Shown piece by piece: positions 8,469-23,400 of a DNA stretch of 64,000 bases (within the stretch, counting starts at the first letter, position 1; each line of letters starts with the position of its first letter). The DNA lies in the NCBI GenBank assembly GCA_965235115.1, contig OZ249448.1, positions 25,420,001-25,484,000 on the forward strand, given 5' to 3'. Position numbers and translations under genes: made by a program. This stretch comes from Laetmonice hystrix. Its lineage: Eukaryota. Below the pieces are notes generated by a model. It was given only the letters and a program-made list of their open reading frames with translations. It was not told the origin of the DNA and searched no databases.

Positions 8469-11400
8469 ATGATGATATCAGTGTCGTTACTGCTGTGGAC
8501 GCTTGTGTTAGCGCCCCTCGTGTATCTCGTGTACGTCGTATGGGCGTTCCTGGCCAACGTTCGACGCCGTGGCCGAGCCGTGGAACAGTTCCCTGGCGAA
8601 CCCCGACACTGGCTTTGGGGACACCTGCACTTGGTAAGGTTGACCATCTCAGCTATCTCTGGCGTTTCTTTAGTATAATAGAGGTGTCAGATTACCAGTT
8701 TGGCCTTATGTCACCGTCTCAGAATATATCTTTACAACATTTAGCATGTAGCTATGTGATGATGGGGAGTTCCGTTGTCCGAGTTCAATCTTCTACTCGG
8801 AACGCGGCGTTCAGTCGTCACGTCTTGGCAGACGACATTTGGTATAGGTTATAACGCGCGCTCGGTCAATGCAGGCCGACTGAAGCGTCACCGAGTGACT
8901 TGAACCGCGGACGAGGCGACAGCACCAACTCGATCTACTCTTGGGGCAATGACCTCATTATCCTATCCCCCCCCAGGGGCAAATTGGTTACTGGGTTTCG
9001 TCTACCTTCTTTTTCTTATGATCAGGTATTGACCGATTACGACATGGGACGTAACATCACTGACGTGTTAAAGTTTCCCAGAGGAGGCCTCATTTCTTGA
9101 ATTCCTAGAAGAATTCCAAGCTGCATGATAGATTTAATCGCCATAATTTGACCTAGCTGTGACCTTAACCTTTTCAAGATCTAAATCAGAGATGGTATAC
9201 AGCTGACATTGCATCTGCACCCTTGTTATCTTGAGATATATAGCAAAAGTGCGTGTGAATAGGTGGCTGTTTCTGGGAACAATTAGATATGAGGAATTTG
9301 ACCTTCATCAAGATAGTAACGTGACTTTGAAATCTGCCACTTTTTGCTAGATATTTTGGCGCCGATTTGTATATCATGTCTACCACTAGATAGTTTCCAG
9401 GCCCGATACGCGAGGTTTGGTTTGTTGGCACCTGTATACCGCTATAGTTTCCAGGCTCCGATAAGCGAGGTTTGGTCTGGTGACACCTGTATATACCGCT
9501 ATAGTTTCCAGGCCCGGATGAGCGAGGTTTGGTGTGTTGACACCTGTATATACCACTAGATCGAGTTTCCAGGCCCCGATGAGCGAGGTTTGGTGTGTTG
9601 ACAGTCCTGTATATACCGCTATAGTTTCCAGGCCCCGATGAGCGAGGTTTGGTCTGGTGACACCTGTATATACCGCTATAGTTTCCAGGCCCCGATGAGC
9701 GAGGTTTGGTCTGGTGACACCTGTATATACCGCTATAGTTTCCAGGCCCCGATGAGCGAGGTTTGGTGTGTTGACGACACCTGTATATACCGCTATAGTT
9801 TCCAGGCCCCGATGAGCGAGGTTTGGTGTGTTGACACCTGTATATATACCACTATAGTTTCCAGGCCCCGATGAGCGAGGTTTGGTGTGTTGACACCTGT
9901 ATACTGCTATAGTTTCCAGGCCCCAATGAGCGAGGTTTGGTAAGGTTACGCCAGGTGACAGTCCGATTCCCTCTCTACCAACATTCTTACCGAGGGCCCA
10001 TTTCGCCTGTCGTCCTTCTTCGCAGTCCACTGGCCATCAGAGAAATCATCCAGACCTCTGGTAGTTTTAAAACGTCTCTTAAATTAGTAGATAGGCTAAA
10101 TTAACATTAGTGGCTCCCCCTGTTGGCAAGGTTATTAACCATAGAAGTTCGCGTTCCATTCAGGCTCACCCGCCTGTCTTACCTTAGTAGGCCTAAGTCT
10201 CTATCTATTCGGCCGTGATAGTCGTAAATTCAGAGCTGGCCAGGTCTAACTGAATCTCATTCACTACAAATGAACTTTGTCGATTTACATTCGTATTTTA
10301 CGAGCTCGTATATATTTTCTATAGACCATAATAGCAAAATGTACGAGTTTTTGTTTCTTTACGAGCTTTTAGGCCATATACGAGCTCGTACAGTGTTAGT
10401 GAAACGAGCCCCTGGCAGGTCTAACTGAATCTCATTCACTACAAATGAATTTTGTCGATTTACATTGGGCCCCGAGCACAGAACCGGTTATGGAGTGCAT
10501 GATGGGAGAAAACGAGGCGGCTTCTGACTCTAGGTCCAACTGCGCAGGTCTCCGCATGTACAAATTGTGTTCCAACAATGTACTGATGCAATCATATCTA
10601 CTGTGTACATACGCCGGCCGAAGAGCGTACCAGAGAGATAGATATGCAGTAAAGAGGCAAAAAAAATAGTTCAGCAAATTAGTTTCGCGTGGGTTTTAAT
10701 TTCGCGATTTTCGAGCCGCCCCCCAACCAAAAAAGAAAAAAGAAATTAAGAAACGCTAAATTAAAATCTGCCAAAAAGGAAAAAAACGCGAAATCTTAGT
10801 CGCGAAATTGTGAGCATTTCAATGTTGTGTTTCAAAATGGGAAATAGCTCATGCAGTTTATAGGTCGCATAGATCAACATTTTTTCTCTGGCCAGGAGAT
10901 CTGTGACCCTACATCCTTCACTTCTTCTAATCATTTATAAAAGTAGGTCAAGATAATATGGCGGCCACCCCATGTTTGAGTTGCCATGGTGATTGTTCAG
11001 TTTCCAGGGCCGGATGAGAAAGGACTTGAGTTCATGCGGGATACGGTGCGCCGGTTTCCACGGTCGGCAGGGGTATGGCTGGGACCGTGGGAACCTTTAG
11101 TAGTCACCAGACACTTTGAGACCGTCAAACCTATCGTCACCACTTCCGGTAGTCCGCCATCAATATTACCTTAACTCCTCACTACATCATAGAAAGCTCT
11201 TACCGCAAAGATTCCCTTAAAGGCCATGGAAAAGTTCAAACTATCAATATAAGGGTGTTCAGCATGCACAAGCTTGTTCCTACCTACAATCCTGTGATGG
11301 TCTGATCTTTAATAAAGGAATAATCAACTGAAATGTAGCTAGGCATTCTCCCGCTGACTTCGTCTGCTTGTCTGCCCTACTTGTCCACGAATTGTTATGT

Positions 11401-20400: not shown

Positions 20401-23400
20401 TATTTCTACCAAGTTTAAATCTGCTTGTTACAAAAATAGCTTTTCCCCCCAGATGACTGTAGGGCTACAACCTCCTGCCGCACTATAGGTACAGCCCTGT
20501 GTAATAACCATCCAGTTAGCTACCACAAACTAATTTATAAGGCTTTGGTGATGCTAACGCTTATACACTGCATGAACTTTTCGCTACTATTTGCTACTTC
20601 TACAACAAAGACACACGTCCAGGTATACGAGTACTGACTGTGCTGCTGTGTCTCCTTATTGTGGCTATATGTTATATTAATATCCTCATGTCTCACGCTT
20701 GATTCTGTCCTAAACCCTGGACCACCTCCCTGAGGTTAGACTTGGCTGTCCTTGTCTCTAGTCCTAAACCCTGGACCACCTCCCTGAGGTTAGACTTGGC
20801 TGTCCTTGTCTCTAGTCCTAAACCCTGGACCACCTCCCTGAGGTTAGACTTGTCCTTGTCTCTAGCTTTGACTCCCGTAACTTGCCATTGTGATAATGTT
20901 GTTATAACTGAGAGGGTCCGATAAGTAAAAATTATAGCATTAATTATCAGATCTGATGATGTATTTATACTTTAAGTAGGCTGTCAACCTCTTGAGGATA
21001 TCTCCTACCAGTATACTCTACGCTTAGTAATCTCCCCTCAACCTATTCTGTATAGACGCTTGAAAACAACGGAATTTCCAACTTCAAGATATACACTGTA
21101 TATCTAACTTGTTAGAATGACCTTTCGGAAAATAATACATATCAAAGGTTGGCAGCCCAGTGCATAAGAGAAAACATACAGTATTTATATTGAAAATCCG
21201 AAGACATAAAAGTAATATTATGCACATCAAGCCTAACTTGATCTGTGGACTATACCTTTTAAAGATCCGTAATCTCGTACTCGTACAAATATCAGAATCT
21301 TGGAATTGTGAATAATGTTAGTAAAAAATCAAGTAACTTCTTGAAAATGATAAATGTAATTATTCCCACAGCAATGTATTTATGTCACTGTGTATGTTAT
21401 ATTGTAATAGGGATGTATAACTGATTTCAGAGCCGAAACCTCTTGGTATCGGCGTCTACACGTTCGGCCTGCCGTGGTTGGGGGACGGCTTACTCATCAG
21501 TCGGGGCAAGAAATGGGCACGCAACCGGAAGTTGTTAACACCGGCGTTCCACTTTGATATCCTTCGTCCTTATATGGCGGTCAATAACACAGCAGTGGAA
21601 ATAATACTGGTGAGAGTTTGACCTTGGAGAAGGTTGTACTGGTGAGGGTTTGACCTTGGAGAAGGTTGTACTGGTGAGGGTTTGACCTTGGAGAAGGTTG
21701 TACTGGTGAGGGTTTGACCTTGGAGAAGGTTGTACTGGTGAGGGTTTGACTTTGGAGAAGGTTGTACTGGTGAGGGTTTGACCTTGGAGAAGGTTGTACT
21801 GGTGAGGGTTTGACCTTGGAGAAGGTTGTACTGGTGAGGGTTTGACCTTGGAGAAGGTTGTACTGGTGAGGGTTTGACCTTGGAGAAGGTTGTACATTGT
21901 TTTATAGAACATATCCGGCGTCCTTACATGGAAGTAACCCGGAAGTGAAGTTTGACCTTGGAGAAGGGCACTGAACACTGATATATAACAACCTTGGTTC
22001 CACCAAACGTAGAAATCGGTGTTTCTCCAGGATTCTTCAAGGTTTTATCTAATGTCTTCTTATTGAAGAAGTCCGATTACTGAAATAAACTGCAGACTTT
22101 CCTTCTGGTCAGGATAAGATATCGAAGGTGGCGGACACAGGAGAGAGCCTGGAGGTGTTCAGTCACGTCAGCCTCCTCACACTGGATATCATCCTCAGGT
22201 GTGCCTGCTCCTACGACAATGACTGCCAAGTCCGAGGGTCAGTACATAACTCTACCCTTTCATACACAGAGATTCAAACTTTAAGAATGATAAAAGAGTG
22301 AGAATTTTAATCGGCAAGCACAGTACGCATTTCGAGGGGGTTCCGAGTACCTCTGGAATTTTGAAAATAAACAAGATAAATTACACATTTTGGGGTCATT
22401 GGATTCGGAGGTGATAAGTGTAGTGTATCTTTTCCCCTGCAGGGAGAGCCACCCGTACGTGCATGCCGTGGCCGACTTAGGCGACCTCTGGGTAAAACGA
22501 AGTCTGTGAGTGACATTCTGACTACGGTAACCATCCAGGCTGGTTCCCGACAACTATTGGACACCAAGATGTCATAACTAGCAGCACACCCCTTCCTAAG
22601 ATTCAGCGAATCCCTTTGTTTCTGGTTTGGTTTTAGCCACCAGGGGGTCTATATTTACTGTATACTGTTAGTAGTCAGATTCTGATGTGTCCTTTCAGCC
22701 AACCCTGGGTATACTCGGACTTTGTGTACTCTTTGACCTCTGATGGGAGGAAGTTCAAACGCCACTGTGACTACGTCCATTCTGTGTCGGACGAAATCAT
22801 TAACAAGAGGAAGCAGGCCTTGGTAAGCAGGTCTCTAAACAATTGTTATAGTGCAGGCATTGGTAAGCTGGTCTGTAAACAATTGTTATAGTGCAGGCCT
22901 TGGTAAGCAGGTCTCTAAACAATTGTTATAGTGCAGGCATTGGTAAGCTGGTCTCTAAACAATATTATTGTTATAGTGCAGGCCTTGGTAAGCTGGTCTC
23001 TAAACAATTGTTATAGTGCAGGCCTTGGTAAGCTGGTCTCTAAACAATTGTTATAACGCAGGCCTTGGTAAGCTGGTCTCTGAACAGTTGATATAGTGCA
23101 GGCATTGATAAGCTGGTCTCTAAACATTTGATATAGTGCAGGCATTGGTAAGCTGGTCTCTAAACATTTGTTATAGTGCAGGCGTTGGTAAGCAGGTCTC
23201 TAAACAATTGTTATAGTGCAGGCCTTGGTAAGCTGGTCTCTAAACATTTGTTATAGTGCAGGCCTTGGTAAGCTGGTCTCTAAACATTTGTTATACCGCA
23301 GGCCTTGGTAAGCTGGCCTCTAAACATTTGTTATAGTGCAGGCCTTGGTAAGCTGGTCTCTAAACAATTGTTATAGTGCAGGCCTTGGTAAGCTGGTCTC

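What the first reader, a model, noticed from the sequence alone, without database searches (positions are those of the whole stretch)
8469..21609. Eight-way mutually exclusive exon-2 array in a single CYP4 P450 gene (Dscam-like diversification of an enzyme)
Seen: between one exon 1 (donor after 8633, phase 0) and one exon 3 (acceptor before 21431, phase 1) lie eight paralogous exons at 9913, 11001, 12536, 13313, 14319, 15893, 18276 and 18884. Each is exactly 148 nt, AG/GT flanked and free of stops. Any single one gives the same 505-aa P450; skipping all of them, or joining two full ones, shifts the frame. I found no extra copy of exon 1 or exon 3 between them, so these are not tandem genes. 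Established: human CYP4F3 uses two mutually exclusive exons over the equivalent N-terminal segment to make CYP4F3A and CYP4F3B, which differ in tissue and substrate preference (leukotriene B4 vs arachidonate). Inference: this gene extends that switch to eight isoforms sharing one catalytic core. I know of no described P450 with an array this large, but could not search to confirm novelty.
Basis: partly seen in the sequence, partly recalled or inferred. Interest (0 to 1): 0.95.

Follow-up and report, generated by a model that had tools for sequence, protein, structure and literature searches.

The report
Eight alternative exons in worm P450
One cytochrome P450 gene of a marine bristle worm carries eight interchangeable versions of the exon that builds the enzyme's substrate entrance. 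All eight have been kept intact by selection, and other worms share the layout, so one gene could make eight enzymes with different substrate tastes, although no RNA data were available to prove they are all used.

Summary
One CYP4-clan P450 gene (12 exon positions, 8469-27207, + strand) has one exon 1, one exon 3 and eight paralogous 148-nt exon-2 candidates between them. All eight are AG/GT-flanked and open in frame 0. Exactly one cassette gives a 505-aa P450 with intact catalytic motifs; 0, 2, 3 or 4 cassettes always give a premature stop.

The cassettes are old: synonymous sites are saturated and the flanks cannot be aligned. They still show coding constraint, with codon-position identity of 0.55/0.61/0.33.

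The same layout occurs in Capitella teleta CYP4BK4 (five intact cassettes plus one decayed) and in a third genome (eight intact plus two decayed). There, young duplicates show pN/pS of 0-0.54. The published, reportedly EST-supported, CYP4BK4 model joins the fourth cassette directly to exon 3 and skips the intact fifth.

The cassette is homologous to the human CYP4F3 exon 3/4 pair (residues 67-114: A-helix, beta-1 sheet, B-helix, substrate access channel).

Not shown: RNA usage in this species, since no RNA runs were served. I found no docking/selector RNA structure, so "Dscam-like" describes the array, not a demonstrated mechanism. One haplotype carries a frameshifted cassette 2.

I found no earlier description. 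This is a new variant of a known kind.

The parts
8469..8633 (+). Exon 1 (55 aa: membrane anchor and the '[15 protein letters not shown]' hinge); donor TTG|GTAAGG, phase 0
   Evidence: 56-60% identical to exon 1 of the Capitella and third-species orthologues
9390..9941 (+). 57-nt minisatellite (~9.6 copies, 90% alike) that copies the acceptor and first ~29 nt of cassette 1, giving nine decoy acceptors upstream of the real cassette 1
9913..10060 (+). Cassette 1 (148 nt, AG/GT, open); contains an internal copy of the exon-1 donor 11-mer at 9937
11001..11148 (+). Cassette 2; an orthologue in a fourth genome is 73% identical (P0003); one haplotype of the sequenced animal has a +TATA frameshift behind 11073
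12536..12683 (+). Cassette 3
13313..13460 (+). Cassette 4
14319..14466 (+). Cassette 5
15893..16040 (+). Cassette 6
18276..18423 (+). Cassette 7
18884..19031 (+). Cassette 8, the ancestral type ('YPGP...QRE'): it groups with the last cassette of the other two arrays and with the single mollusc exon
21431..21609 (+). Exon 3 (constitutive; entered in phase 1, ends in phase 0); Pfam p450 positions 75-122
22113..27207 (+). Constant catalytic core. Exons 4-12 are 22113-22237, 22443-22505, 22699-22822, 23643-23781, 23956-24085, 24746-24941, 26548-26630, 26807-26872 and 27108-27204, with the stop at 27205-27207. It carries the CYP4 I-helix signature [14 protein letters not shown]-helix ESMR, meander YRPSRF and heme loop FSAGPRNCIG.

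Best explanation
This is the orthologue of Capitella teleta CYP4BK4, a CYP4-clan fatty-acid/eicosanoid-type P450, in a polychaete annelid. Tandem duplication of its second coding exon has built a cluster of eight mutually exclusive exon candidates. Each cassette encodes the 49 residues that form the A-helix, beta-1 sheet and B-helix, which make up the membrane-side substrate access channel. Exon 1 (membrane anchor) and exons 3-12 (heme and catalytic core) are shared. Shown here: the architecture; the frame rule that only single-cassette mRNAs encode a protein (148 = 3n+1, all other combinations stop early); long-term purifying selection on every cassette; birth-and-death evolution of the same array in other annelids. 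Inferred: most cassettes are spliced in one at a time, giving up to eight isozymes that differ in substrate access or preference, as CYP4F3A and CYP4F3B do in humans. Mis-spliced forms with 0 or 2 or more cassettes would be removed by nonsense-mediated decay or give truncated dead protein. Weak cassette donors suggest regulated competition for exon 1 and exon 3. What selects the cassette (tissue, stage, diet or xenobiotic) is unknown.
For: Architecture and uniqueness. Frame rule: all 8 single inclusions give 505 aa; 28 of 28 double, 56 of 56 triple and 70 of 70 quadruple inclusions, and full skipping, give early stops. Constraint: homology ends at the AG and the GT; codon-position identity is 0.55/0.61/0.33, pS is 0.76 (saturated) against pN 0.42, and no indel has arisen in any cassette. 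Fold-critical residues G3, P4, E6, G8, L9, P20, G28 and P29 are invariant. Orthologous arrays: Capitella has 5 intact cassettes plus 1 decayed between one exon 1 and one exon 3; the third genome has 8 intact plus 2 decayed. Young duplicates there have pN/pS of 0-0.54, and their exons are 3-5 times less diverged than their flanks. The decayed copies show what unselected cassettes become. The c2 orthologue in a fourth genome is 73% identical. Indirect transcript support: the published CYP4BK4 model, reported as EST-supported, joins cassette 4 directly to exon 3 and skips intact cassette 5 (PMC4229089). Homology to the CYP4F3 switch exon. Function of that region: PMC12784423. Cassette donors match the U1 consensus less well than constitutive donors, 5.0 against 6.3 of 9.
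Against: There is no RNA evidence for this species: every run found was genomic DNA, and the protein databases hold no close spliced protein. No docking/selector RNA structure and no conserved intronic element was found, so the selection mechanism is unexplained. Cassette 2 is frameshifted on one haplotype. Cassette 1 sits behind nine decoy acceptors and contains a strong internal donor-like site. Heterozygous variants in the cassettes are 4 synonymous to 3 non-synonymous, which does not show strong present-day constraint. The EST support for the Capitella junction is the authors' general statement; I did not see the ESTs.
Confidence: 0.75

Rival explanations
1. Only one or two cassettes (for example the ancestral-type cassette 8) are really used. 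The others are unused or dying duplicates that merely look intact.
For: No RNA data. Frameshift allele of cassette 2. Decayed cassettes exist in the orthologous arrays, so turnover is real. Decoy repeats and an internal donor-like site burden cassette 1.
Against: Synonymous sites between cassettes are saturated and the flanks cannot be aligned, yet all eight keep exact length, frame, AG, GT and fold-critical residues. Unselected copies in the sister arrays have lost these features. c2 has a 73%-identical orthologue in another genome. The published Capitella model uses a non-terminal cassette.
Confidence: 0.15
2. The cassettes belong to separate transcription units, either as variable first exons with their own promoters (as in UGT1A or clustered protocadherins) or as remnants of tandem genes with hidden exon 1 or exon 3 copies.
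For: Variable-exon arrays with individual promoters are a known way to diversify detoxification enzymes (own knowledge: UGT1A).
Against: There are no further exon-1 or exon-3 copies in the window or among the cassettes. All 21 intact cassettes in three species have an AG acceptor with a pyrimidine-rich tract and start in phase 0 without a start codon or membrane anchor. A P450 that lacks exon 1 would lack its anchor.
Confidence: 0.04
3. Several cassettes are chained into one mRNA through alternative splice sites, as the Capitella automatic gene model ELU04871.1 does.
For: The automatic model P0001 chains three cassettes in frame by using shifted acceptors.
Against: With the conserved AG/GT sites, every multiple inclusion gives an early stop. 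A P450 with tandem A-helix/beta-1 modules has no precedent. The same locus is modelled differently in the curated CYPome.
Confidence: 0.03
4. The array is an assembly artefact, such as collapsed or expanded haplotypes.
For: The locus is rich in minisatellites.
Against: The cassettes are only 41-62% identical in DNA. Independent contigs of three read sets cover cassettes 1-5 at uniform single-copy depth. Two other genomes have the same architecture.
Confidence: 0.01

Closest known systems
Human CYP4F3 exon 3 / exon 4 mutually exclusive pair (CYP4F3B / CYP4F3A)
   Same: It is the same exon of the same P450 clan. The cassette profile aligns to residues 69-114 of a primate CYP4F protein that carries both exons. 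The exon borders fall at the same places ('...GHL..|xPxxExGL' and '...xS|'). [quoted passage not shown]
   Different: CYP4F3 has two exons, not eight. The vertebrate pair is selected together with alternative promoters (as cited in PMC3022543), while nothing is known about selection here. The annelid duplications are independent and lineage-specific. Usage is proven for CYP4F3 and not here.
Large arthropod MXE clusters: Dscam1 exon 4/6/9, myosin heavy chain, the ABC transporter dMRP (own knowledge; PMC3535345, PMC6071210, PMC3912159 listed)
   Same: Tandem arrays of same-length, same-phase homologous exons lie between constitutive exons, and the arrays evolve by birth and death.
   Different: Dscam-type clusters use a docking site and selector sequences. 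None was detectable here. Here the length of 148 nt (3n+1) lets the reading frame itself police the choice. The diversified module belongs to an enzyme's substrate channel rather than to an adhesion domain.
Capitella teleta CYP4BK4 (Dejong and Wilson 2014, PMC4229089) and the CYP4BK/CYP4BL enzymes of the snail Cyphoma gibbosum (PMC3022543)
   Same: CYP4BK4 is the orthologous gene: its locus carries the paper's diagnostic ESMR and FRPDR motifs and the same exon-1 / array / exon-3 layout. The Cyphoma relatives are induced by dietary prostaglandins, and some hydroxylate LTB4.
   Different: The published CYP4BK4 model is an N-terminally truncated 438-aa protein that starts inside a cassette. The array was not noticed. 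The Cyphoma authors only speculated about alternative splicing because they had no genome. The Littorina relative has a single exon 2.
P450 gene 'blooms' and UGT1A-type variable-exon arrays (own knowledge; Thomas 2007 as cited in PMC3342872)
   Same: The apparent outcome is the same: many substrate-recognition variants of a detoxification or lipid-oxidising enzyme, evolving by birth and death.
   Different: Here the diversity is made by duplicating one internal 148-nt exon inside one gene. It is not made by duplicating whole genes or promoter-bearing first exons.

Membership tests
Cytochrome P450 (Pfam PF00067) | Collinear match of the exons to the P450 profile | tested here: met
   Exons 3 and 6-11 hit PF00067 in order, at profile positions 75-431
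Cytochrome P450 (Pfam PF00067) | Heme-binding loop FxxGxRxCxG, K-helix ExxR and the PERF-type meander | tested here: met
   FSAGPRNCIG at residue 446, ESMR at 373, YRPSRF at 425 in the spliced 505-aa product
CYP4 family / clan 4 | I-helix signature EVDTFMFEGHDTT, including the glutamate that ester-links the heme in CYP4A/B/F enzymes | tested here: met
   [13 protein letters not shown] at residue 307. The nearest named relatives are annotated CYP4F2-like or CYP4A-like
CYP4BK subfamily (nomenclature rule: more than 55% identity to a member) | Identity above 55% to a named CYP4BK protein | tested here: inconclusive
   Orthology to C. teleta CYP4BK4 rests on shared locus architecture, 71% identity in exon 3 and 56% in exon 1. 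I did not compute full-length identity, because spliced proteins could not be passed by reference.
Mutually exclusive exon cluster (criteria of Pillmann/Hatje/Kollmar, PMC3228551) | Neighbouring exons of similar length, with the same phase, conserved splice sites and sequence homology | tested here: met
   Eight exons of 148 nt, all AG/GT, all phase 0 to 1, 31-57% aa identity to each other
Mutually exclusive exon cluster | Exactly one exon of the cluster is present in each mature mRNA | not testable with these tools
   No RNA runs were served for this organism. The only indirect support is the frame rule and the published Capitella model.
Dscam-type docking/selector mechanism | One docking site complementary to a selector sequence next to every variable exon | tested here: not met
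   No shared complementary 11-mer. Duplex energies equal shuffled controls in the window and the third species; in Capitella 7 of 100 shuffles do as well. No conserved intronic element. Weak or long-range structures cannot be excluded.
Variable first-exon arrays (UGT1A, clustered protocadherins) | Each variable exon has its own promoter and start codon and is a 5' exon | tested here: not met
   All cassettes are internal exons with acceptors and carry no start or anchor. A single exon 1 supplies these.

The most novel reading that the evidence does not exclude
Annelids diversify a P450 by an 'exon bloom' instead of a gene bloom. A birth-and-death array of 5-8 mutually exclusive substrate-channel exons in CYP4BK4-type genes would yield a panel of isozymes from one promoter and one catalytic core, possibly chosen by tissue, diet or pollutant exposure. 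The same exon was duplicated independently in vertebrates (CYP4F3), which would mark this 49-residue module as a recurrently exploited specificity cassette of CYP4 enzymes.
Probability: 0.55. Interest if true: 0.85.

Novelty: new variant of a known kind. Interest (0 to 1): 0.78.

Why it matters
P450 diversity is normally explained by whole-gene duplication. The only well-known P450 that switches substrate preference through mutually exclusive exons is human CYP4F3, with two exons. An eight-way array at the very same exon, kept by selection and present in several annelids, would be the largest such cluster reported for any P450 and one of the few in an enzyme. It offers a natural domain-swap series (eight access-channel modules on one identical catalytic core) for studying how the A-helix, beta-1 and B-helix region sets CYP4 substrate specificity.

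It also corrects annotation: Capitella CYP4BK4, a proposed candidate for PAH metabolism in a pollution-indicator worm, is mis-modelled because of its array. Expression studies that treat it as one transcript may miss isoform switching.

Tried and rejected
1. RNA evidence. Two run searches, one with the 9-kb array and one with the exon 7-8 stretch, listed only four runs of one sample. Laying them on 8520-14519 showed they are genomic DNA; X4 covers only high-copy intronic repeats.

2. Spliced proteins in databases. Searches with the Capitella N-terminal model and with the Littorina N-terminal fragment found no close annelid transcript or isoform set. The best identity to my isoforms was 46-50%.

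3. Docking/selector RNA structures. I ran an exact or GU-tolerant 11-mer scan, cross-species intron blastn and RNAduplex scans with shuffled nulls. The GGCCCTGG site at 19665, complementary to the conserved cassette 5' end, and the Capitella site at 13813-13860 are not better than chance. In Capitella, 7 of 100 shuffles do as well.

4. PDB search with the cassette profile gave only chance hits, because the cassette is too short. I mapped the structure through CYP4F3 homology instead.

5. The contig carrying the c2 orthologue P0003 could not be read because the sample file was too large.

6. I did not fold an isoform. A spliced 505-aa protein has no reference, and I did not paste long sequences.

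7. Earlier scan notes held nothing at this place.
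Full report
**1. Observation**

The window (no N; G000 contig C18:25420001-25484000, a 627-Mb assembly in 35 contigs) holds the eight reported exon-2 candidates at 9913, 11001, 12536, 13313, 14319, 15893, 18276 and 18884. 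Each is exactly 148 nt, preceded by AG, followed by GT, and open in frame 0. Only 3 of 8 and 2 of 8 are open in the other two frames. With the local base composition, a random 49-codon stretch is open with probability 0.078, so eight in a row has a chance of about 1e-9.

tblastn with the exon-1 and exon-3 peptides finds only 8469-8633 and 21433-21609 in the whole window. A profile of the eight cassettes finds only these eight at E below 1e-20 in the whole genome. The other CYP4 paralogues match once each and weakly.

Genomic contigs from three read sets of one animal cover cassettes 1-5 at uniform depth of about 50x.

**2. The gene**

Splice sites that chain the open frames give a 12-exon gene:
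- exon 1, 8469-8633
- one cassette
- exon 3, 21431-21609
- exons 4-12 at 22113-22237, 22443-22505, 22699-22822, 23643-23781, 23956-24085, 24746-24941, 26548-26630, 26807-26872 and 27108-27204

The exons hit Pfam p450 collinearly. The spliced 505-aa product has the CYP4 I-helix signature [14 protein letters not shown]-helix ESMR, meander YRPSRF and heme loop FSAGPRNCIG.

**3. Frame logic**

Because 148 = 3n+1, each of the eight single-cassette mRNAs is open for 505 codons. Skipping all cassettes stops after 90 codons. All 28 double, 56 triple and 70 quadruple inclusions stop more than 55 nt upstream of the last exon junction. At the protein level "exactly one" is enforced by the frame.

Cassette donors match CAG|GTAAGT at 5.0 of 9 positions on average, against 6.3 for the constitutive donors. 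Weaker donors are typical of regulated exons.

**4. Are the cassettes selected?**

An alignment of each cassette with 100 nt of flank on either side shows that homology starts at the AG and ends at the GT. The flanks cannot be aligned. Pairwise DNA identity is 41-62% and protein identity 31-57%. Mean identity by codon position is 0.55, 0.61 and 0.33. Mean pS is 0.76 (saturated) against pN 0.42, and where dS can be computed, dN/dS is 0.11-0.53. No cassette has an indel. G3, P4, E6, G8, L9, P20, G28 and P29 are invariant.

Sequences this diverged cannot keep frame, length and splice sites by chance. Each cassette has been translated and selected for most of its history.

**5. Relatives**

An exhaustive profile search returned 119 proteins. 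The best is Capitella teleta ELU04871.1, an automatic model that chains exon 1 with three cassettes.

The Capitella locus (L019) has one exon 1 and five intact AG-148-GT cassettes at 10459, 10865, 11567, 12249 and 13349. It also has one decayed copy near 13033 without an acceptor, and one exon 3.

A third genome (ENA ERZ25767047, three overlapping loci merged) has one exon 1 that is 60% identical to ours. It has eight intact cassettes, two decayed ones (at 22480 and 23461, the first with a frameshift) and one exon 3 that is 86% identical.

A fourth genome holds a 73%-identical orthologue of cassette 2 (P0003; its DNA was not retrievable). The related Littorina gene has a single exon 2.

In a tree of all cassettes, the last cassette of each array groups with the single mollusc exon (88/84). 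c2 groups with P0003 (98/95). c1 and c3-c7 form a lineage-specific clade (97/98). This is a birth-and-death pattern with the 3'-most cassette as the ancestral type.

Young duplicate pairs, where dS is not saturated, give pN/pS of 0.00, 0.23, 0.33, 0.49 and 0.54. Their exons are several-fold less diverged than their flanks; for example, Capitella 10459 against 12249 has 4 of 148 differences, all synonymous, while about 30% of the aligned flank differs. The decayed copies are an internal control for what happens without selection.

Earlier scan notes (unchecked) call this genome a polychaete annelid, which fits.

**6. Identity and indirect transcript support**

The Capitella locus carries ESMR and FRPDR, the motif pair that the Capitella CYPome paper lists for CYP4BK4 only. 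The paper's Table S1 sequence for CYP4BK4 (438 aa, 11 exons) starts at a methionine inside the cassette at 12249 and continues directly into exon 3. It skips the decayed copy and the intact fifth cassette.

[quoted passage not shown] I did not see the ESTs. If that holds for this junction, a non-terminal cassette is spliced straight to exon 3 in vivo. The paper does not mention alternative exons.

**7. What the cassette encodes**

Two vertebrate proteins in the hit list (a lemur CYP4F11-like and a skate CYP4F2-like model) contain two cassette-homologous segments each, which are read-throughs of the CYP4F3-type exon pair. hhalign places the cassette profile on residues 69-114 of the lemur protein with probability 96.9%.

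In human CYP4F3 the swapped region is residues 67-114: A-helix, beta-1 sheet and B-helix. The first two line the substrate access channel, and the swap changes LTB4 versus arachidonate preference (PMC12784423).

The cassette column that corresponds to CYP4F3 Arg-100, which that paper's models place at the substrate carboxylate, reads L, V, N, M, F, V, L and S in c1-c8. The columns of the second half of the cassette carry up to six or seven different residues. That the isoforms differ in substrate access is an inference by homology.

The snail relatives CYP4BK/CYP4BL are induced by dietary prostaglandins, and some hydroxylate LTB4 (PMC3022543).

**8. Mechanism of choice**

I looked for a Dscam-type docking/selector system and found none:
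- No complementary 11-mer is shared by five or more introns.
- No intronic element is conserved between species.
- Duplex-energy scans do not differ from shuffled controls.
- The only convergent site, in the Capitella last intron, is matched or beaten by 7 of 100 shuffles.

The frame rule plus nonsense-mediated decay, with competition among weak donors, is the best-supported mechanism. What regulates the choice is unknown.

**9. Caveats**

No RNA data were available for this species, and no close spliced proteins exist in the databases.

The sequenced animal is heterozygous for a TATA insertion behind 11073. It frameshifts cassette 2 and creates a stop inside it.

Cassette 1 follows nine decoy acceptors. 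It also contains the 11-mer TTGGTAAGGTT, which otherwise occurs only at the exon-1 donor.

The heterozygous SNPs seen in cassettes are 4 synonymous and 3 non-synonymous. Some cassettes may therefore be on their way out, as expected in a birth-and-death array.

**10. Novelty**

Nine full-text searches found no earlier description of a P450 with more than two mutually exclusive exons or of this annelid array. Searches that combined P450/CYP4 with mutually exclusive exons, tandem exon duplication, CYPome or annelids did not return one; the other two searches retrieved the CYP4F3 and Capitella papers used above. The library lacks most subscription journals, so this is not proof.

Recurrent tandem duplication of the same exon in different lineages is a recognised phenomenon (PMC3342872). 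This would be a striking enzyme example.

**Verdict**

The array is real and has been under selection. It is very probably a mutually exclusive exon cluster, a new variant of a known kind, with usage of all eight cassettes still to be shown.

Noticed in passing
window 8000-27500: Minisatellites (period 10 or more) cover 28% of this gene region, against 2-3% of the orthologous loci in Capitella and the third species. Several straddle exon borders and multiply splice sites: a 57-nt repeat at the cassette-1 acceptor, a 40-nt repeat at the cassette-8 donor, a 32-nt repeat starting at the exon-3 donor (21605-21895), a 40-nt x19 repeat at the exon-6 donor (22813-23575), a 45-nt x11 repeat at the exon-9 acceptor (24252-24755, open in frame with exon 9), and a ~110-nt repeat that copies the exon-9 3' end '[10 protein letters not shown]' (24910-26300).
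   Followed up: partly
window 9394-9941 and 9937: Each unit of the 57-nt repeat looks like a 27-nt mini-exon (AG|TTTCCAGG...GGTTTG|GT) encoding FPGPDERGL. Cassette 1 itself contains TTG|GTAAGGTT, an 11-mer found elsewhere in the 64 kb only at the exon-1 donor (8631). Use of that site would make an in-frame 27-nt micro-exon. I did not test this.
   Followed up: partly
window 11073 (cassette 2): A heterozygous 4-nt (TATA) insertion appears in contigs of two read sets of the same animal. It frameshifts cassette 2 and introduces an in-cassette stop. An R18Q change at 11053 was seen in contigs of the same two read sets.
   Followed up: partly
window 27257-28039: An 18-nt repeat (about 40 copies, GTAGAGGTTCACCAGCCG) lies about 60 nt downstream of the stop codon, presumably in the 3' UTR. 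It is open in two frames.
   Followed up: no
window 31500-40200: At least four Kazal-type inhibitor-like exons (Cys pattern '...PVCGSDG.TY.N.C...') lie at about 31525-31707, 34732-35013, 37034-37333 and 39923-40135. The last three sit in ~2.3-2.9-kb tandemly repeated units.
   Followed up: no
L019 (Capitella teleta KB302014.1, record 148763-170490 reversed): The public annotation splits one gene into ELU04871.1 (exon 1 plus three chained cassettes, 201 aa) and a 438-aa P450 that starts inside the fourth cassette. The curated CYP4BK4 has the same truncated start. Cassettes 1 and 4 encode identical peptides and differ at four synonymous sites.
   Followed up: yes
P0020 (Propithecus) and P0050 (Rhinoraja): Vertebrate CYP4F gene models that read through both alternative exons. 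The skate model suggests that the two-exon arrangement exists in cartilaginous fish as well as mammals.
   Followed up: no
window 10320-10519, 11120-11919, 12920-13319: Very high-copy interspersed repeats lie inside the inter-cassette introns, with depth up to ~190,000 in the read contigs.
   Followed up: no
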